Source of the DNA: Mytilus edulis
Taxonomy: Eukaryota
Direction: 5' to 3'
Length of the DNA: 64,000 nt
Assembly (NCBI RefSeq): GCF_963676685.1
Contig: NC_092353.1
Location: 45,880,001-45,944,000, forward strand
In this document: positions 4,654 to 64,000 of the stretch, in pieces
Numbering within the stretch: the stretch's first letter is position 1
How the letters are laid out: each line of letters opens with the position of its first letter
The notes under the pieces: generated by a model
What the model was told of the DNA's origin: nothing
Databases searched by the model: none
Seen by the model: only the letters and a program-made list of their open reading frames with translations
Made by a program: the position numbers and the translations under genes

Positions 4654-7457
4654 AACTAGAGGCTCTAAAGAGCCTGTGTCGCTCACCTTGGTCTATGTGA
4701 ATATTAAACAAAGGAAGCAGATGGATTCATGACAAAATTGTGTTTTGGTGATGGTGATGTGTTTGTACATCTTACTTTACTGAACATTCTTGCTACTTAC
4801 AATTATCTCTATCTATAATGAACTTGGCCCAGTAGTTTCAGTGGAAAATGAAAATTGTTAAAAATTGACTATAAAGGACAATAACTCCTTAAGGGTCAAT
4901 TGACCATTTCCGTCATGTTGACTTATTTGTAAATCTTACTTTGCTTAACATTATTGATGTTTACAGTTTATCTCTATCTATAATAATATTCAAGATAATA
5001 ACCAAAAACAGCAAAATTTCCTTAAAATTACCAATTCAGGGGCAGCAACCCAACAACCAGTTGTCAGATTCATCTGAAAATTTCAGGGCAGATAGATCTT
5101 GACCTGATAAACAATTTTACCCCATGTCAGATTTGCTCTAAAGGCTGCGGTTTCAGAGTTTTAAGCCAAAATCTACATTTCACCCCTATGTTCTATTTTT
5201 AGCAATGGCGGCCGTCTTGGTTGGTTAGCCAGGTCACGGGACACAATTTTTAAACTAGATACCCCAATGATGATTGAGGCTAAGTTTGGTTTAATTTGGC
5301 CCAGTAGTTTCAGAGGAGAAGATTTTTGTAAAAGATGACTAAGATTTACGAAAAATGGTTAAAAATTGACTATAAAGGGCAATAACTCCTAAAGAAATCA
5401 ACAGACCATTTTGGTCTTGTTGACTTGTTTGTAGATCTTACTTTGCTGAACATTTTTGCTGTTTACAGTTTATCTCTATCTATAATAATATTCAAGATAA
5501 TAACCAAAAACAGCAAAATGTCCTTAAAATTACCAATTCAGGGGCAGCAACCTATCAACGGGTTGTCCAATTCATCTCAAAATTTCAGGGCAGATAGATC
5601 TTGACCTGATAAACAATTTTACCCGATGTCAGATTTGCTCTGAATGCTTTGGTTTTTGAGTGATAAGCCAAAAACTGCATTTTACCCCTATGTTCTATTT
5701 TTAGCCATGGCGGCCATCTTGGTTGGTTGACCAGGTCACCGGACACAATATTTTAACTAGATACCCCAATGATGATTGTGGTCAAGTTTGGTTTAATTTG
5801 GCCAAGAAGTTTCAGAGGAGAAGATTTTTGTAAAAGATGACTAAGATTTACGTAAAATGGTTAAAAATTGACTATAAAGGGCAATAACTCCTAAAGGGGT
5901 CAACAGACCATTTTGGTCATGTTGACTTATTTGTAGATCTTACTTTACTGAACATTTTTGCTGTGTACAGTTTATCTCTATCTATGATAATATTCAAGAT
6001 AATAACCAAAAACAGCAAAATTTCCTTAAAATTACCAATTCAGGGGCAGCAACCCAACAACCAGTTGTCAGATTCATCTGAAAATTTCAGGGCAGATAGA
6101 TCTTGACCTGATAAACAATTTTACCCCATGTCAGATTTGCTCTAAAGGCTGCGGTTTCAGAGTTTTAAGCCAAAATCTACATTTCACCCCTATGTTCTAT
6201 TTTTAGCAATGGCGGTCATCTTGGTTGGTTAGCCAGGTCACGGGACACATTTTTTAAACTAGATACCCCAATGATGATTGAGGCTAAGTTTGGTTTAATT
6301 TGGCCCAGTAGTTTCAGAGGAGAAGATTTTTGTAAAAGATAACTAAGATTTACGAAAAATGGTTAAAAATTGACTATAAAGGGCAATAACTCTTAAAGAA
6401 ATCAACAGACTATTTTGGTCTTGTTGACTTGTTTGTAGATCTTACTTTGCTGAACATTTTTTCTGTTTACAGTTTATCTCTATCTATAATAATATTCAAG
6501 ATAATAACCAAAAACAGCAAAATGTCCTTAAAATTACCAATTCAGGGGCAGCAACCTATCAACGGGTTGTCCAATTCATCTCAAAATTTCAGGGCAGATA
6601 GATCTTGACCTGATAAACAATTTTACCCGATGTCAGATTTGCTCTGAATGCTTTGGTTTTTGAGTGATAAGCCAAAAACTGCATTTTACCCCTATGTTCT
6701 ATTTTTAGCCATGGCGGCCATCTTGTTTGGTTGACCAGGTCACCGGACACAATTTTTTAACTAGATACCCCAATGATGATTGTGGTCAAGTTTGGTTTAA
6801 TTTGGCCAAGTAGTTTCAGAGGAGAAGATTTTTGTAAAAGATGACTAAGATTTACGTAAAATGGTTAAAAATTGACTATAAAGGGCAATTACTCCTAAAG
6901 GGGTCAACAGACCATTTTGGTCATGTTGACTTATTTGTAGATCTTACTTTACTGAACATTTTTGCTGTGTACAGTTTATCTCTATCTATGATAATATTCA
7001 AGATAATAACCAAAAACAGCAAAATTTCCTTAAAGTTACCAATTCAGGGGCAGCAACCTATCAACGGGTTGTCCAATTCATCTCAAAATTTCAGGGCAGA
7101 TAGATCTTGACCTGATAAACAATTTTACCCGATGTCAGATTTGCTCTGAATGCTTTGGTTTTTGAGTTATAAGCCAAAAACTGCATTTTACCCCTATGTT
7201 CTATTTTTAGCCATGGCGGCCATCTTGGTTGGTTGGCCAGGTCACCGGACACAATTTTTAAACTAGATACCCTAATAATGATTGTGGCCAAGTTTGGTAA
7301 AAATTGGCCCAGTAGTTTCAGAGGAGAAGATTTTTGTAAAAGTTAACGACGGACGACGACGACGACGGACGACGGACGACGGACGCCGGACGCCGGACGC
7401 CGGACGCCAAGTGATGAGAAAAGCTCACTTGGCCCTTTGGGCCAGGTGAGCTAAAAA
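4654..7457 (-). mobile_element. Helentron-associated non-autonomous element (HINE/DINE-1/pearl type) with ~5 x 502-bp central tandem repeats
   Basis: Minus strand: TTTTTAGCTCACCTGGCCC-AAA-GGGCCAAGTGAGC (subTIR plus inverted repeat), (GTCC/GTC)n microsatellite, core units (ATTGACT at 4864, 5365, 5867, 6369, 6871), 3' subTIR GGTGAGC and hairpin AGGCTCT-TT-AGAGCCT-CTAGTT. Confidence 0.92.
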
Positions 7458-11052: not shown

Positions 11053-11752
11053 AATGAACTTTAGTCTTATATATATATATAGCTCTGACTGAATTTTAAC
11101 TAGCTAGCCTTGGATTGAGATAGATGTCTAAAACTCAATTTCATTCAATCTAAATACAGCTGTTGTAATTTCATACAGCAGTTCTAATTAAATTTTTAGG
11201 TGCCCAGGAGTCATATACAATTATAGGAAAGTGTGACATAAAAACAAATGTTCTGTGATCTAGTGGTGTTCACTGATTTACCCCCTTTCAAAATTTAAAT
11301 TTATGGCAAACAAAATTGATGATTAATCGTTGCTCTTTAATGCCACTTTTAGCATTCTTTGCTTCATAGCGGCCCTTAGTTTATATCAGTGTTGGTGTAT
11401 GAGTGCCTGCAGTGTGAATGTTTGTTTAGAATTTTTTTATCTGAGTATTCTATCTTTTCCGAACTAAAAAAAAAATCCTTTAAAATTAGAGGTTTTTAAA
11501 AAAATCTCTGAGTTATTCTCTGCGCTTTATTTTGGGAAATCCAAACTTTTTATTCTACGATTTATTTAAAATTCCACATTCTTCTTCGAAAAATAATTTG
11601 TAGTTGTTAGAAAATTTCGGAACTCAGAAGTCAGAAAAAAGGTCGGAGTTGTCCAAATACACCTAATTGACCTCCCAAAAGCTCTCAGCGTAGTCCAAAT
11701 ACTCCAAACTCAGAGGCCAGAAAATTATTAATTTAAGTCAATACAGATTGAA

Positions 11753-12375
11753 GTGAAACCCACAACCTCAGTGTTGACAGACCAGTGATAACAGGAGTGA
11801 AACCCACAACCTCAGTGTTGACAGACCAGTGATAACAGTAGTCAAACCCACAACCTCAGTGTTGACAGATCTAGACCAGTGATAACAGGAGTGAAACCCA
11901 CAACCTCATTGTTGACAGACCAGTGATAACTGGAGTGAAACCCACAACCTCAGTGTTGACAGACCAGTGATAACAGTAGTCAAACCCACAACCTCAGTGT
12001 TGACAGACCAGTGATAACAGGAGTCAAACCCACAACCTCAGTGTTGACAGACCAGTGATAACAGGAGTCAAACCCACAACCTCAGTGTTGACAGACCAGT
12101 GATAACAGGAGTCAAACCCACAACCTCAGTGTTGACAGACCAGTGATAACAGGAGTCAAACCCACAACCTCAGTGTTGACAGACCAGTGATAACAGGAGT
12201 CAAACCCACAACCTCAGTGTTGACAGACCAGTGATAACAGGAGTCAAACCCACAACCTCAGTGTTGACAGACCAGTGATAACAGGAGTCAAACCAACAAC
12301 CTCAGTGTAGACAGACCAGTAATAACAGGAGTCAAACCCACAACCTCAGTGTTGAAAGACCAGTGATAACAGTAG
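11753..12375 (-). repeat. 44-bp minisatellite (~14 copies) amplified from a SINE head
   Basis: Unit GTCAAACCCACAACCTCAGTGTTGACAGACCAGTGATAACAGGA; its reverse complement aligns to SINE bases ~3322-3366. Confidence 0.93.
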
Positions 12376-13204
12376 TGCTAACTGTCACTTAGACCACTCT
12401 AAATTGCCTGTGACTGAGGGAGGAATTAGTTATTCTAGGTTGCACTGCAAATTCGTAGGGATTGTGGGCGACATACAGACTTTGAATATTTCCTGCTTCA
12501 CTTGACTAAAACTTACTATTTACAAATATATACTTTTACTATGTACCCCCGGTACTCTTTTTTAATGGCCTTTCATAATTTTAAAATCATTTGCACTTTT
12601 ATAATCATAAAGAACACAGTTATCATTTCGACCTAACAATTACGACTTATAATTACAGATAAACTTTGCACAGCCTGTTATCAATACATTGAAAAATATA
12701 TAAAAAAAATCATTTTTCAGAGCTTATCTAATGATCAAATATTATAAAAAGAATGACACCATTATACTTTTCCCATCGATAAAATATGTAGGAGTTTCAA
12801 AGGCTTAAAGAGGAAATGAACATAAAAAACCGTTGGAAGAATCTAACTACTCAACTAATACACTGTAATGACCAACTATTGATAAATTGTCAATCGTTAA
12901 ACAGCCATCTGTGGCCTTGGACTGACTTAATTCTGATACCCTCTTATTGTTTCTGATCACGTTAAAATACTCAGGTGATTACCAAATTCCATGTCTTGGA
13001 AATGTTTACTAACAAATCGTTAATTGATATCAGATAATTCAGTGGAATTGACAATTGTTGTTGCTGTCCTTCTTATTTGTTGTTATTTTGATATGATTAA
13101 AAGATACAGTGAAACCTGTTTAAACTGAACCTCTTCAGGACTTAAGGTTTTCAGTATATGAAATATAAAGAAGTTTGTCGGTAACATAGCTGGATACTGT
13201 TATA

Positions 13205-25617: not shown

Positions 25618-25723
25618 CGACCAATCCACGGTGGATCGTAGCTCTCGTTTTCTGTATCCATGTTCTGCATGGCTAGGATGTAAGAGATTGGCATGGTTCT
25701 GTGTATTCTTTGATATGGCTTTT
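25618..25723 (-). CDS. DGKZ: DGK zeta/iota-like shared exon (KAISKNTQNHANLLHPSHAEHGYRKRELRSTVDWS)
   Basis: ttttcttttccag acceptor, TCG|gtaagt donor, 106 nt (phase 2 to 0). KAI...RSTVDWS matches DGKzeta KAITKS...IRSTVDWS. Confidence 0.95.
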
Positions 25724-42744: not shown

Positions 42745-43444
42745 TATGCAATCATTTTAACTAAGAAGAACCTGCATAATTTAAAATATTTAATCGTCTA
42801 CCTTTAAATATTTTTAGGAACTGTGCAACAAATAGTTACACTTAAATATGAATCAAAAACTAGTGATTTGGACAAGGGAGATAATTTTATCATATACATA
42901 AGTATTGAAACATCATGGCCCTTAAGGGAAAAGTTTCATAATTTATTAAAATTCAATCATAAATCCATTTCATAATATAGGTATTCATGTCTCATGGGTT
43001 TTCATACTATTAAGAATGCATTGTGACATCAATATTTCCTTTGAAAAAGCATGCATAGTACGAATTCATATGGCGTACATTTCAAGCATAATGATCTGAC
43101 CATATATAAAATTTATTTCAATTTATTTCCTTTCATTACTTGTACACTAAATAAACTATGGGTTGAGTTCAATATCGTTCATGCAGTTGAACCTCCACCC
43201 CTTTTATCCTGGGTCAGAAATCCCCCTGTTAAACCCTTGTAAACCATCAACAGTTTTTATAAAGGTTTCTAAAACAGAAACTTTACTGTCAAGTCGACAG
43301 TTTTGATAGATATAATTACAACCTGAATACTTTAGAGCATTGAAAAAAAATTGAAACTAACAGGAAAGGATTCATAAACTGATAATGGAGTAAATGAAGC
43401 AAACTTCAGAATCTATGTTTTAAGAGTAAGCTGACAAAACTTAC

Positions 43445-44445
43445 GCATGACCAGGAGAAGTCTGAATTGCTTTGTAACGAGATTCCTCTTCAGTCGGCAG
43501 ATTAACATCGACAGAACTTGATCGGATTTGCTTTGAACTGTCTGAATCTTCATCAAAGGAAGCTTGTCTTTTGACCATTGGCCGAGTCGTATTTGACACA
43601 TTGTCTGAAGTTGAGCCTTTACATAAACATCCATCGAAGGACGTCGATCGTTGTTGTTTGATCACGGGTACTTGTAAAGTGAGCGCATTTGTATAATCTC
43701 CTTCGGTTGAATTATCTATACTTGAATCATTTCCTGTTGGATTTAATTCTATATAGTCATCATCCGCGAAATATAAATTTTCCGATTTTGAAAATGTATT
43801 TTCATTTGAGCAAATTTCTGTTTTTGCATTCTGTCCATTTGTCTTTGTTTGTTCACTAATATATTCGCTATTTTCAGTTTCTTCTGTATCAGTTTCCGAT
43901 TCATATGAGCTATCTGAAAAATCTTCATCTGATGAGCTAAAACTTCCACTTGAGGAAAACAAATTTTCGTCAGCTTCGTTTCCAAGGTAAAATTTACTAT
44001 GTGTATGTTTTTCGATCTCTTCTAAACTGTCTTTATAAGCTTGTTCAACATATACACAGTGTACACATAATTTTGGAATTTCTATTGAAGGTCTATGTTT
44101 TTGATATCTACTTAATTTAAAGCTTTTCCTCCTCCTTTCTTTAATTCCAGGATCGGAAAGATTCTCATCGGACGATGTACTCCATGAGCGATCTCCACCT
44201 GCGTTACATGAATCGAAAGATTGACAGCGCCGCCCTGGTCTAGGAACAGCTAAACAGTCCTTCTCTTTATGTAAGCTAGCCGAATCAAAACTTGAGGATC
44301 GCCCCCTCTGTTCGAGTCCAGGAACCTCTAAACATTTTATATCCTTCGGTTCATCAATAGATGTGGTCCTTTTTTGTCTTGGTAAACAAATTTTTGGAAC
44401 TTCTAAGGATGGAGATCCTGAACGTGCTCGTTTAAAGATGTTCAT
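43445..44445 (-). CDS. DGKZ: Type IV diacylglycerol kinase, long alternative first coding exon (~334 aa Ser/acid-rich N-terminal extension, rdgA-like)
   Basis: Only long ORF in the window (track 43441-44463). First ATG at 44445 (MNIFKRARS...). The apparent stop lies inside a perfect donor CATGC|gtaagt. The phase-2 end joins the 25723 exon in frame (SPGHA-KAISK). SLEVPK, RSxSFD and RSSSVDV.LPT motifs resemble the long N-terminus of insect rdgA-type DGKs as I recall it. Confidence 0.85.
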
Positions 44446-61500: not shown

Positions 61501-63113
61501 AGGTCCCTAATCCAGTATATAGTAAATATGAATAGATGATTTTTAAAACAATCAATTCTTGTCATTAGAAAAAAAAAACATAAAAACAATAACCTATTCA
61601 AAGAGAGATAACTCTGTTGTCCCTAATTAATAGTCAGCAATTCTATATATTGGAATTATAACAATAGCCTTTTGTAATAGAAAGTCATTATAAACTTCCT
61701 ACACAAACCTTTTAATAGATCTACTTCATGCATGCTAACAATGTATTCTGTAATGTAATTGTACACTGGTACATGTACTTTAACGTTTTCCCCCATTATA
61801 GAGACTTGAGATATATTGAAAAAAATAATGGTCCAATGTTACAACATCATGATGTTACAAGAGTACAGTGACTGATTTTCACTAAACATTTCCCATAGAG
61901 AGAAGTATTGCTAATTTGAGTTGCTTTTTAAAAAAAGTCAATTTTCAATTTTTTCAGTCTTGTTCGTTTTACTTTAGCATTGGGATATCTTTTGAGGATA
62001 AGCAGCAGTACCAATCAGATTGAAATTATAAATTTCCCCAATCTTTGGTTCTTAGTAACCCTGACAGGTATTGAACCCCAACCTTTCTGCACTCCAGGGG
62101 TTTTCCATTAGAAAATTAAGTACAAAACTCTTCTAAAATATATTTATGGTGCATTTAAATAAATCATTTAATCTAAAAGTAGATTACTCAAATCATTCTC
62201 AAGTTATTTTATGACATGTTAAATATTTTTTAATAACAAATCTGTACAAAATTATCTGATTTTACCTACTGTTAGTACTGAAAGGTCATTGAAAGTTATT
62301 GACTTATGTTGAAACAGAATTTTAATTACCTTAATTCAGGAAGCAATTAAGGATAAAAAAAACTCAGCTTCCGACTTTAATTTCTTAGCTGATTCACTAA
62401 ATATGACAGACTAAGCATAAGGATAAAGAAAATCTTAAACAAAAATGTTGTTGTTGTTGAAATATTCGGTTTATTTACTATACATGCTTTAAGGTATTAG
62501 GTGGACTACCAGCATGTCAAAATTTTTGTAACTCTATGCATTTAAACTTGTTCCCCCATATTAAATTCCCCATATCACTTCAGAAAATGGACTCAAAAAT
62601 GTCCATGAAATCATTAAGAAACAGATTCTACCACTGTATCCTGTTCATTTGTTACTTAATTAGGGTAGTCATATTTTCAAAAGTACAAAAGATCTTTGAA
62701 TTTCCATGGCTGAATAATGGCTCTTCTAAATTTTCCTCCATTGTCTAGAACGCTATCCACAAACTATACATGTATCAATGAATAATAGCAATTTAGTGAC
62801 TTCAGAATTATTTCTAGGGTAACCTAGGTACACAGTACCTCTGGCGGTACCTCTGTGAGTAGAGAAAATTTCTCCAAAGTGACCCTTTGTGTCCACCATA
62901 TAAACGAAGTGCTGATCTTTTTTTTTCTCTGATGTCACCCTTTTTATAATTGACTCAATAATAACAAAACATTAACAATCCAAAAAGTCATTCTTTTTTG
63001 TCAAGTTTTTCTATGCAAGTCTATGCATCAGTGGTTTCTTATGAAAATGTTACAAACACTGACGCATAGGTCAAGGTTTCAACATTTGACAGGGTCAAGG
63101 TCTCGTCTCTTAC

Positions 63114-63151
63114 CTTTTAATGGCATAGGATCTTCTCATTCCTTTACTCAT
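63114..63151 (-). CDS. DGKZ: Type IV diacylglycerol kinase, short alternative first coding exon (exon 63114-63189; CDS MSKGMRRSYAIK+AG)
   Basis: Minus strand: T-rich acceptor ...ttttatatttttcag, AAAATGA start context with upstream in-frame TGA stops, donor AAAAG|gtaaga. The phase-2 end joins the A at the start of the 25723 exon to give ...IKR-KAISK, as in DGKzeta R|KAITK. Confidence 0.7.
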
Positions 63152-63183
63152 TTTATATTGTTTTGTTCAACGCCTACATGTTC

Positions 63184-63230
63184 ACTTACCTGAAAAATAT
63201 AAAATAACATAAAAATTGATAAAAACATCT
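63184..63230 (-). promoter_or_regulatory. Candidate recursive splice site (3' splice site immediately followed by 5' splice site: ttttcag|GTAAGT)
   Basis: Minus-strand sequence tgtttttatcaatttttatgttattttatatttttcag GTAAGT: an AG-free T-rich tract, CAG, then a perfect U1 match. Confidence 0.6.
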
Positions 63231-64000
63231 AATTACACATGGTTCCTAGAATCTTTGGAGCAGATGTTAAAGATAAGACATAATACCTCAATTGTATGTT
63301 TCTAAGAATTTTTGGATTATATGCAAACAGAAATGACACCATATAATTGATGTACATGATGCATACCTGTAATTGACAGTTTTTAGGTAATTTTTTTCTC
63401 ACCTACTTTTTTTTTAAAATCCCATTGTTATTGATTTAATTTGGGTTTTTCCTAAAAAAAAATAAAATTAAACAGTAATTTAACTTCCATCTGACCTCAC
63501 ACTTAAACTGTAGCAAAAATAAAGCAGTTATAATAATTTCAGTTTAATATGATATACAGTTAATACTGTATTGTTCTAAATCAATGATGTCTTCTTACAT
63601 ATATAAGATCATTGCATAGACATCATTGTCATGGCAAATTTTTTAAATGTTCATTATATTTTGACCTGATTTATAATCAATTAAATTAAGTCACCTAATG
63701 TTTGGGGAAACCAACAATATTCAACAATATTCTATTTATAGCGTCAGCATCATCTGAAAAAGTCATTTTGTTTGAGATTATGAGAACAATGAATTCTTTC
63801 GATGTTACACCAATTTCTTGATTGATTCCGATATACATGTATACTATGGATTCATTATTATTCGTTGGATACTAATTATTTAGGATTTTGTGGGTATAGG
63901 TTAACCACGAAATTTAATGTTCAACAAATGACAAATTTTCTACAGGCTTTGTTGTATGAAGACTTCGTCAAAACCACGAAATTAAATGTCCACGAACATG

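What the first reader, a model, noticed from the sequence alone, without database searches (positions are those of the whole stretch)
63114..63230. Start-codon-bearing recursive-splicing exon that may act as an N-terminus switch for a DGK
Seen: on the minus strand a strong AG-free pyrimidine tract and CAG are followed immediately by a perfect donor GTAAGT. A second strong donor (AAG|gtaaga) lies 76 nt later. The exon between them contains in-frame stops, a minimal ATG-TAG uORF, then AAAATG-SKGMRRSYAIK in the right phase for the 25723 exon, 37.4 kb away. Established: AG|GT juxtaposition followed by a cryptic exon is the signature of recursive splicing in Drosophila and vertebrate long introns, where the upstream exon's last bases decide which donor wins. 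Inference: transcripts from an upstream exon beyond the window either use this site as a zero-length stepping stone, keeping an upstream N-terminus, or include the exon and restart translation with a 13-aa basic N-terminus. I am not aware of this having been described in a mollusc.
Basis: partly seen in the sequence, partly recalled or inferred. Interest (0 to 1): 0.85.

Follow-up and report, generated by a model that had tools for sequence, protein, structure and literature searches.

The report
Mussel DGK exon starting with GTAAGT
A small exon in the blue mussel's diacylglycerol kinase zeta-like gene is real, spliced and already annotated, and it is built like the "recursive splicing" exons of flies and vertebrates, but no data here show the recursive step.

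Summary
On the minus strand, an AG-free T-rich tract and CAG abut GTAAGT at 63189. AAG|gtaaga follows 76 nt later. All three frames of the exon carry stops. ATG-TAG and then AAAATG-SKGMRRSYAIK read in phase into exon 25723.

The exon is real. An RNA contig is spliced at both of its ends. NCBI isoform X48 of Mytilus edulis "diacylglycerol kinase zeta-like" (XP_071135002.1) starts MSKGMRRSYAIKRKAISK.

The conserved MAEC...KKQTSY exon lies 36.6 kb upstream and ends in CAG. The site therefore sits at 49% of a 74,030-nt intron and would regenerate a perfect CAG|GTAAGT. A second coding 5' exon (MDET...) lies 5.3 kb upstream.

Joining either exon to the 76-nt exon gives AG|G TAA, an immediate stop. 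MSKG would then be a second reading frame unless a non-coding exon precedes it.

Not shown: use of the regenerated donor, meaning lariats, sawtooth coverage or junction counts. The motif is not enriched in the window, the intron or the genome (32 hits against 37 control).

Verdict: an annotated alternative exon with recursive-splicing-exon architecture, a probable new member of a known kind. I put recursion at about 0.5.

The parts
63193..63228 (-). AG-free, T-rich polypyrimidine tract in front of the acceptor (26/36 pyrimidines; T at -4 to -8)
63184..63192 (-). cag|GTAAGT: a 3' splice site abutting a consensus 5' splice site; G of GT = 63189
   Evidence: It is the only AG|GTRAGT on the sense strand of the whole 74,030-nt intron.
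63114..63189 (-). 76-nt alternative cassette exon (RS-exon architecture) with stops in all three frames
   Evidence: the X14 RNA contig covers L004 614-692 with 0 mismatches and has unaligned 27 nt and 28 nt flanks. X21 stranded depth is confined to this bin; it is the start exon of RefSeq isoform X48.
63186..63188 (-). TAA that closes the reading frame coming from either upstream coding exon (..TAC AG|G TAA after MAEC, ..TTT AG|G TAA after MDET)
   Evidence: read directly from the sequence
63174..63179 (-). minimal ATG-TAG start-stop uORF
63114..63151 (-). AAAATG start and coding part MSKGMRRSYAIK plus AG (phase 2)
   Evidence: the first 13 aa of P0015 map to 63151-63113 at 100% identity.
63108..63113 (-). 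downstream donor AAG|gtaaga (8/9 match to MAG|GTRAGT)
   Evidence: It is used in the X14 contig.
43432..44445 (-). Long alternative first coding exon (MNIFKRARSGSPS..., about 338 aa) lying inside the intron downstream of the 76-nt exon
25618..25723 (-). Common exon (R)KAISKNTQNH...RSTVDWS, to which all alternative 5' exons join

Best explanation
The 76-nt stretch is a genuine, already annotated alternative 5' cassette exon of the Mytilus edulis type IV (zeta/iota-like) diacylglycerol kinase gene. It has the architecture of an expressed recursive-splicing (RS) exon.

Shown:
- It is spliced at cag|63189 and at 63114|gtaaga.
- RefSeq isoform X48 begins at its AUG.
- It lies 36,564 nt into the 74,030-nt intron between the conserved MAEC...KKQTSY exon (which ends CAG) and exon 25723. 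It also lies 5,289 nt downstream of a second coding 5' exon (MDET..., which ends TAG).
- Other annotated isoforms join those exons directly to 25723.

Inferred mechanism: the exon is defined by its acceptor and by the donor at 63114. It is spliced to the upstream exon, which regenerates CAG|GTAAGT (9/9 consensus) or TAG|GTAAGT. The regenerated donor and the downstream donor then compete. Use of the regenerated donor removes the exon and leaves the upstream N-terminus intact. Use of the downstream donor includes it, which closes the upstream ORF at AG|G TAA and offers the MSKG AUG after a start-stop uORF.

My odds: exon real and annotated about 0.97. Recursive step actually used about 0.5. Inclusion yields a working 13-aa N-terminal isoform about 0.4, against mainly unproductive or down-regulating inclusion about 0.6.
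For: - Sequence anatomy.
- RNA: the X14 contig of 134 nt aligns at L004 614-692 with 0 mismatches and runs on unlike on both sides. X21, a stranded library, has depth 18.6 only in the exon's bin, 0 in the neighbouring bins, the sense of a minus-strand RNA, and no mismatch rows. The X1 contig starts exactly at the exon's first base and runs 82 nt into the downstream intron. That matches an intermediate in which the upstream intron is removed first.
- Annotation: P0015 = XP_071135002.1, isoform X48, starts MSKGMRRSYAIKRKAISK. It is identical to X46 except for the N-terminal exon.
- Upstream exons were located.
- It is the only AG|GTRAGT in the 74-kb intron, at 49.4% of its length. The composite is expected 0.0025 times per intron.
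- It fits published RS features: TT at -5/-6 occurs in 196 of 197 fly ratchet points (10.1101/006163). A second donor lies within 100 nt (PMC6224609). The Ubx 73-kb intron has alternatively included RS microexons (PMC8605326).
Against: - No lariat, sawtooth or junction-count evidence exists for use of the donor at 63189. The single reads call listed no loose ends for the exon, because repeats swamped the table.
- The motif is not enriched in the window, the intron or the genome, at 32 hits against 37 control. Only about one other independent genomic copy of the 14-mer has a nearby strong donor. A selected class of ratchet points is therefore not evident in this genome, and a few exons starting GTAAGT are expected by chance genome-wide.
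- The exon is included even though the upstream exon in the X14 contig ends CAG, so the perfect regenerated donor does not always win.
- In mammals most annotated RS-exons are simply included, because the exon junction complex (EJC) blocks the regenerated donor (PMC6224609).
- X24 showed no reads on the exon.
Confidence: 0.55

Rival explanations
1. It is an ordinary alternative cassette exon in the 5' region. The exon happens to begin with GTAAGT, that sequence is never used as a donor (for example because the exon junction complex masks it), and exon-skipped mRNAs arise by direct splicing of the MAEC or MDET donors to 25723.
For: No enrichment of the motif at any scale. A handful of exons starting with GTAAGT is expected by chance in a genome with several hundred thousand exons (my estimate). 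The exon is included after a CAG-ending exon. Annotated RS-exons in deuterostomes are mostly constitutively included (PMC6224609).
Against: A 9/9 consensus donor regenerated at an exon junction is used efficiently wherever it has been tested in flies and in human minigenes (PMC8605326, PMC6224609). The mid-intron position in a 74-kb intron, the TT at -5/-6 and the frame-breaking, stop-laden content are those of cryptic RS-exons rather than of coding cassettes. The X1 contig suggests the upstream intron is removed first.
Confidence: 0.35
2. It is a poison or translational-control exon rather than an N-terminus switch. Inclusion after the coding MAEC or MDET exon truncates their ORFs to 34 codons and makes the mRNA a target for nonsense-mediated decay or a poorly translated message. 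The MSKG ORF in RefSeq is only the longest ORF picked by the annotation pipeline. This rival concerns function and is compatible with either splicing route.
For: The frame reads AG|G TAA after both known coding 5' exons. There are stops in all three frames and the length is 76 nt, not a multiple of 3. The MAEC AUG has a strong context, gaaaaATGG. RS-exons of vertebrates typically carry premature stops (PMC5126111). No MSKG-type N-terminus was found in other bivalve annotations among the cluster representatives.
Against: The upstream partner in X48 is unknown and could be a non-coding exon 1, since the MAEC exon itself has an acceptor. AAAATG has A at -3. An annelid model (Ridgeia, P0002) has a 13-aa basic N-terminus of the same length and phase, ending ..AIRR|KAISK, against ..AIKR|KAISK here.
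Confidence: 0.3
3. It is the start of a longer exon or an alternative terminal exon. Transcripts splice into 63189 and then read on into the downstream intron, through retained intron or intronic polyadenylation.
For: The X1 contig runs from 63189 through the donor to 63032. Many small RNA-like runs hold 0.5-0.79 of the sampled words of 63064-63239, more than the exon alone would give.
Against: The X14 contig and X21 reads stop at the donor, and X21 has zero depth in the 200 nt downstream. RefSeq joins 63114 to 25723. The X1 contig has a depth of only 4.6 and equally fits a splicing intermediate.
Confidence: 0.05
4. It is a chance motif in an intron and not an exon.
For: Motif counts are at chance level.
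Against: A spliced RNA contig, stranded reads and a RefSeq isoform.
Confidence: 0.02

Closest known systems
Drosophila Ultrabithorax microexons mI/mII (Hatton et al. 1998, as described in PMC8605326 and 10.1101/006163)
   Same: Short exons that begin with a consensus donor, lie inside a roughly 73-kb intron, are spliced to the upstream exon, and are then either kept or removed through the regenerated donor. Both included and skipped mRNAs exist.
   Different: The Ubx microexons are 51 nt, frame-preserving and coding. The mussel exon is 76 nt, breaks every frame and brings its own AUG. Recursion was shown experimentally for Ubx and is not shown here.
[quoted passage not shown] 2015, as summarised in PMC5126111 and PMC6224609)
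   Same: YAG|GT site in a long first intron, a second donor shortly downstream, an exon body with premature stops, and inclusion versus removal decided by donor competition.
   Different: The vertebrate cases are mostly cryptic and absent from mRNA. This exon is annotated, carries a usable AUG, and is included even after a CAG-ending exon.
Annotated RS-exons repressed by the exon junction complex (Blazquez et al. 2018, PMC6224609)
   Same: An annotated exon whose junction with the preceding exon regenerates a strong 5' splice site.
   Different: Those are mainly constitutive coding exons of deuterostomes, and EJC dependence was shown by knockdown. Nothing is known about the EJC here, and this exon is skipped in most annotated isoforms.
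[quoted passage not shown]
   Same: One site serves either as a stop-bearing alternative exon or as a zero-length stepping stone.
   Different: A different gene and phylum. I know this comparison only from its title in a reference list.
Alternative N-termini of mammalian DGK zeta and iota from alternative 5' exons
   Same: Type IV DGKs vary their N-terminus by choice of 5' exon in front of the conserved RKAI(S/T)K exon. The mussel gene has at least four such exons (MAEC, MDET, MSKG, MNIF).
   Different: No recursive-splicing architecture has been reported for those, to my knowledge.

Membership tests
Recursive splice site / RS-exon | [quoted passage not shown] | tested here: met
   ttttatatttttcag|GTAAGT at 63192-63184, with an AG-free tract of 36 nt.
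Recursive splice site / RS-exon | TT at -5/-6 of the acceptor (196 of 197 fly ratchet points, 10.1101/006163) | tested here: met
   Positions -4 to -8 are all T.
Recursive splice site / RS-exon | Lies in a long intron (fly range 11-133 kb) | tested here: met
   The intron from the MAEC exon to 25723 is 74,030 nt and the site is at 36,564 nt. The intron from the MDET exon is 42,755 nt (the MDET lengths were one base short and are corrected by hand).
Recursive splice site / RS-exon | A second 5' splice site within 100 nt that defines the RS-exon | tested here: met
   AAG|gtaaga lies 76 nt downstream.
Recursive splice site / RS-exon | An upstream exon is spliced to the site | tested here: met
   The X14 RNA contig aligns to L004 614-692 and then runs on unlike for 27 nt. 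The 3 extra aligned bases (cag) fit an upstream exon ending CAG, as the MAEC exon does. The identity of the upstream exon was not seen.
Recursive splice site / RS-exon | The regenerated 5' splice site is used (lariat starting at the site, sawtooth read density, re-splicing intermediate consumed) | not testable with these tools
   The only reads call is spent. The runs read showed no reads in the unique intron sequence flanking the exon.
Recursive splice site / RS-exon | SA|SD motif more conserved than its flanks in related species | tested here: inconclusive
   Sampled 31-mers of 63064-63239 are held by runs under five organism labels, but these can only be near-identical relatives.
Recursive splice site / RS-exon (as a genome-wide class, as in Drosophila) | Motif over-represented, with many sites showing the full architecture | tested here: not met
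   TTTTTCAGGTAAGT has 32 hits against 37 for the control. Of the 31 other hits, only L013 and one duplicated pair have a strong donor within 200 nt.
Type IV diacylglycerol kinase (zeta/iota) | C1 domains, DAGK catalytic and accessory domains, ankyrin repeats, C-terminal ETAV | tested here: met
   P0015 carries precomputed Pfam PF00130, PF00781, PF00609 and PF12796/PF00023. Its C-terminus is ...DQETAV. The conserved RKAISK...RSTVDWS exon is in the window.

The most novel reading that the evidence does not exclude
This would be the first recursive-splicing exon documented in a lophotrochozoan, with a twist not described in flies or vertebrates. The RS decision in the middle of a 74-kb intron would choose between the bilaterian-conserved MAEC...KKQTSY N-terminus (exon removed through the regenerated CAG|GTAAGT) and a 13-aa basic N-terminus (exon kept). 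In the second case the upstream ORF is closed at the junction-spanning AGG-TAA and translation restarts after a start-stop uORF. The choice of splice donor would thus be read out as a choice of translation start in a signalling kinase.
Probability: 0.2. Interest if true: 0.6.

Novelty: new member of a known kind. Interest (0 to 1): 0.35.

Why it matters
Recursive splicing has been shown only in Drosophila and vertebrates. I found no paper in the searchable library that links it with molluscs, mussels or oysters. A verified case in a bivalve would extend the mechanism to the third great bilaterian branch.

The case would also be naturally tractable. It is a single site at the midpoint of a 74-kb intron, with both outcomes visible as annotated isoforms that differ only in the N-terminus of a DGK.

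If recursion is not used, the locus is still a clean example of how a stop-laden 5' cassette exon can replace a conserved N-terminus or silence the message. As it stands, the exon is already in RefSeq. Only the mechanism would be new.

Tried and rejected
- Reads. I laid four runs on window 62501-68500 to see loose ends at 63114 and 63189 and any upstream exon within 5.3 kb. The loose-end and joint tables were filled by high-copy repeats (L004 1201-1600, 1801-2400, 5201-5400), and the rows for the exon were not printed. Only binned depth and two contig rows could be used. The letters of the upstream partner were not seen. X24 had no reads on the exon.
With P0015 residues 1-60 it found no second MSKG-type N-terminus. 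The 15 listed members of the 100-member Mytilus cluster showed MNIF, MAEC, MDET and one MKYP N-terminus but no MSKG.
- The first Markov simulation timed out and was rewritten.
- Rejected reading: the X21 depth comes from the 43-nt, 93% similar copy of the T-tract on C1. That copy's three mismatches would have appeared in the other-letters table, and none is listed for that bin.
- Rejected reading: the exon is a first exon with its own promoter. The X14 contig diverges from the genome 3 nt upstream of 63189.
The join was checked exon by exon against the RefSeq protein.

Full report
**1. The observation.**
On the minus strand the window reads ...agatgtttttatcaatttttatgttattttatatttttcag|GTAAGTGAACATGTAGGCGTTGAACAAAACAATATAAAATGAGTAAAGGAATGAGAAGATCCTATGCCATTAAAAG|gtaagagacg. 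The G of the first GT is 63189 and the last base before the second donor is 63114, so the interval is 76 nt. The 36 nt before the CAG contain no AG and are 26/36 pyrimidine. All three frames are closed inside the exon. ATG-TAG lies at 63179-63174 and AAAATG at 63155-63149. The ORF MSKGMRRSYAIK plus AG continues in phase into exon 25723-25618, which reads KAISKNTQNHANLLHPSHAEHGYRKRELRSTVDWS.

**2. Chance.**
The bare motif is not unusual.
- CAGGTAAGT occurs twice in the window against 0.49 expected, and 12 of 100 shuffles reach two.
- AG|GTRAGT occurs once on the sense strand of the whole intron, against 1.8-2.4 in Markov simulations.
- The 14-mer TTTTTCAGGTAAGT occurs 32 times in the 1.37-Gb genome, against 37 for the backwards control.

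The composite is rare. It requires the motif, at least 14 of 20 pyrimidines, no AG in the tract, and a second AG|GTRAG donor 25-160 nt downstream. That is expected 0.0025 times per intron. Among the 31 other genomic copies of the 14-mer, only one independent site (L013) and one duplicated pair (L017/L018) have such a donor within 200 nt. The exon region is single-copy apart from a 43-nt, 93% match of the T-tract on another chromosome.

**3. What it is.**
The window is G000:C10:45880001-45944000. The contig length of 84,842,022 equals that of the NCBI Mytilus edulis record carrying 'diacylglycerol kinase zeta-like' isoforms. Searching the 35-aa common exon against protein representatives, and then a full-length hit against the 90% clusters, returned P0015. 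P0015 is XP_071135002.1, isoform X48, 934 aa, and begins MSKGMRRSYAIKRKAISKNTQNH. Its first 13 residues map to 63151-63113 at 100% identity. X48 equals X46 in the remaining 921 residues and ends ...QETAV. Its Pfam content (C1, DAGK catalytic and accessory domains, ankyrin) is that of type IV DGKs. So the exon is already annotated as the start-codon exon of one of at least 48 isoforms. The join was verified exon by exon.

**4. RNA evidence.**
I laid four runs on L004, which is window 62501-68500; the exon is L004 614-689.
- In X14, an RNA library kept as contigs, a 134-nt contig aligns at 614-692 with no mismatch. Its first 27 and last 28 letters lie on nothing in the stretch. It is therefore spliced at the donor 63114 and at the acceptor. 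The three extra aligned bases (cag) mean the upstream exon ends CAG.
- In X21, raw stranded reads give a mean depth of 18.6 in bin 601-800, all with the first mate on +. The neighbouring bins have depth 0 and no mismatch rows are listed. That is a sharply bounded exon on a minus-strand RNA.
- In X1, a 158-nt contig starts exactly at the exon's first base and runs through the donor 82 nt into the intron, at depth 4.6. This fits an RNA whose upstream intron is gone while the downstream intron remains.
- X24 had no reads on the exon.
- The loose-end and joint rows for the exon were not printed, because repeats filled the tables. I could therefore neither read the upstream letters nor count junctions.
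- In the run search, thirteen small, probably-RNA runs held 0.5-0.79 of the sampled words of 63064-63239. That is more than the exon alone would give (about 0.31) and less than DNA-sized runs (0.93-1.0). It is compatible with the X1-type partly spliced form.

**5. The surroundings.**
Searching X46 (P0016) against the genome placed its first 34 residues at C10:45979750-45979851. The sequence there shows an internal exon at window coordinates 99938-99754:

ttttcttttcag|GATTAAAAG...gaaaaATGGCGGAATGC...AAACAGACATCTTACAG|gtaatttt

It encodes MAECASIPSDSDNEEDLLDKLSNFSIKKQTSY. This N-terminus...RKQTSY|RKAISK, recurs in gastropods, cephalopods, echinoderms and hemichordates. The MAEC-to-25723 intron is 74,030 nt, and the cag|GTAAGT sits 36,564 nt into it, at 49.4%.

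Further 5' coding exons are:
- MDET... at 68576-68479, which ends TTTTAG|gtaacg, looks like a first exon, and lies 5,289 nt upstream of the site;
- the long MNIF... exon at 44445-43432, inside the downstream segment.

Donor strengths against MAG|GTRAGT are as follows. The first four are; the two MDET values are corrected by hand.

| Donor | Sequence | Match |
|---|---|---|
| MAEC native | CAG\|GTAATT | 8/9, lacking +5G |
| Regenerated with MAEC | CAG\|GTAAGT | 9/9 |
| Exon's own (63114) | AAG\|GTAAGA | 8/9 |
| MDET native | TAG\|GTAACG | 6/9 |
| Regenerated with MDET | TAG\|GTAAGT | 8/9 |

**6. Consequence for the reading frame.**
After either coding 5' exon the junction reads ..TAC AG|G TAA or ..TTT AG|G TAA, that is arginine and then a stop. 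Inclusion therefore truncates the upstream ORF to 34 codons. The MSKG AUG follows 34 nt later, after the ATG-TAG. The 'switch' thus needs reinitiation, unless X48 starts from a non-coding exon 1. One must exist, because the MAEC exon has an acceptor, but I could not locate it.

Weak hints favour coding. There is an A at -3 of the AUG. An annelid model (Ridgeia piscesae KAK2182209.1, P0002) has a 13-aa N-terminus, MLRTLVRTKAIRR|KAISK, that resembles MSKGMRRSYAIKR|KAISK in length, phase and the ..AI[KR]R ending. Two of the five identities (M1 and the AG|A arginine) are forced, so this is only a lead. No second MSKG-type N-terminus appeared among bivalve cluster representatives or the listed cluster members.

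**7. Mechanism.**
The anatomy is that of an expressed RS-exon, as defined in the literature.
- It has tandem acceptor and donor, with a short exon and a second donor (PMC8605326).
- TT at -5/-6 occurs in 196 of 197 fly ratchet points. Host introns there range from 11 to 133 kb, and the Ubx 73-kb intron has alternatively included microexons that begin with a donor (10.1101/006163).
- A second donor lies within 100 nt (PMC6224609).
- Inclusion brings premature stops, the 'binary switch' (PMC5126111).

On these grounds I take the most likely route to be as follows. The exon is defined, then spliced to the upstream exon. Competition follows between the regenerated donor at 63189, which removes the exon and preserves the upstream N-terminus, and the donor at 63114, which includes it. 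Steps one and two are supported by RNA. The competition step is inference.

Three points argue for caution. The motif class is not enriched in this genome. The exon is included even after a CAG-ending exon. In mammals the exon junction complex usually silences such regenerated donors (PMC6224609). I put recursion at about 0.5.

**8. Comparison and novelty.**
The closest parallels are Ubx mI/mII, vertebrate RS-exons and EJC-repressed annotated RS-exons. This exon differs in breaking every frame while bringing its own AUG. Searches for 'recursive splicing' together with mollusc, mussel or oyster returned nothing relevant. The exon itself is already annotated. If recursion is confirmed it would be a new member of a known kind in a new phylum, with an unusual coupling to start-codon choice.

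**9. Limits.**
The single reads call and the single run search are spent. No DNA of other molluscs could be reached. Earlier scan notes on 'recursive' sites in this genome concern splice-junction minisatellites and do not bear on this locus.

Noticed in passing
L004 5203-5416 (window coordinates 67703-67916, outside the window): A repeat of about 154-158 nt with very high, strongly strand-biased RNA depth in X21 (878 against 24). Hundreds of reads 'go back 154' with CATA between the sides, meaning tandem or circular junctions not present in the reference. It looks like an expressed satellite- or MITE-like element.
   Followed up: no
window 63701-64900 (L004 1201-2400); also window 63830-64000: High-copy interspersed repeats, with more than 40 copies at 84-87% identity for the 170-nt piece. 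They are covered on both strands by RNA reads and contigs from all four runs, and they swamped the loose-end tables.
   Followed up: partly
window coordinates 68576-68479 (L004/L005, outside the window): Alternative first coding exon MDETVIDIYTLSQDPLDISPPRRSCCMPFGCF of isoforms X23/X28/X41, with a cysteine-rich end (CC..C) that looks like a palmitoylation motif. A relative in Logan assemblies reads MDIAYITVPEESPPKQSCIPFCCF.
   Followed up: partly
window 43432-44445 (-): A coding exon of about 338 aa for the long MNIFKRARSGSPS... N-terminus (isoforms X3-X16; conserved in oysters, scallop, Octopus and Patella as M.IF(K/R)KSRS.SPSFE(I/V)PK(L/I)C). It lies inside the intron downstream of the 76-nt exon.
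   Followed up: partly
P0040 (Mactra antiquata), P0049 (Dreissena polymorpha X7): Heterodont bivalve isoforms start MGKAISKNA..., so a 5' exon contributes only ATG plus two bases. MGxxxS fits the N-myristoylation consensus (my own knowledge, untested).
   Followed up: no
L013 = G000:C2:84008347-84008960, site at C2:84008647-84008660 (-): This is the only other independent genomic copy of TTTTTCAGGTAAGT with a strong AG|GTRAG donor close by (46 nt downstream) and a 31-nt AG-free tract. It is a second candidate RS-exon. It also begins GTAAGTGAA.
   Followed up: no
window 11736-12377 (-): A tandem array with a 44-nt period that stays open in all three frames, with repeated translation GCGFDSCYHWSVNTEVVGLTPVITGLSTLRLWV. 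It lies inside a DGK intron.
   Followed up: no
window 4990-7450 and 27-588: Large tandem duplications of about 500-1000 nt, with repeated ORF pieces such as PFYVNLSHLLQKSSPLKLLGQIKPNL.., and an 82-nt tandem repeat (SEGMFLVPSEGMFLI..), both in DGK introns.
   Followed up: no
window coordinates ~74438-74329 (L005, outside the window): The region matches the odd N-terminus MKYPQYNSLKLNIYYKVSLW.. of M. galloprovincialis isoform X12 at only 75-82% identity and in two frames. It is probably a species-specific or spurious 5' exon.
   Followed up: no
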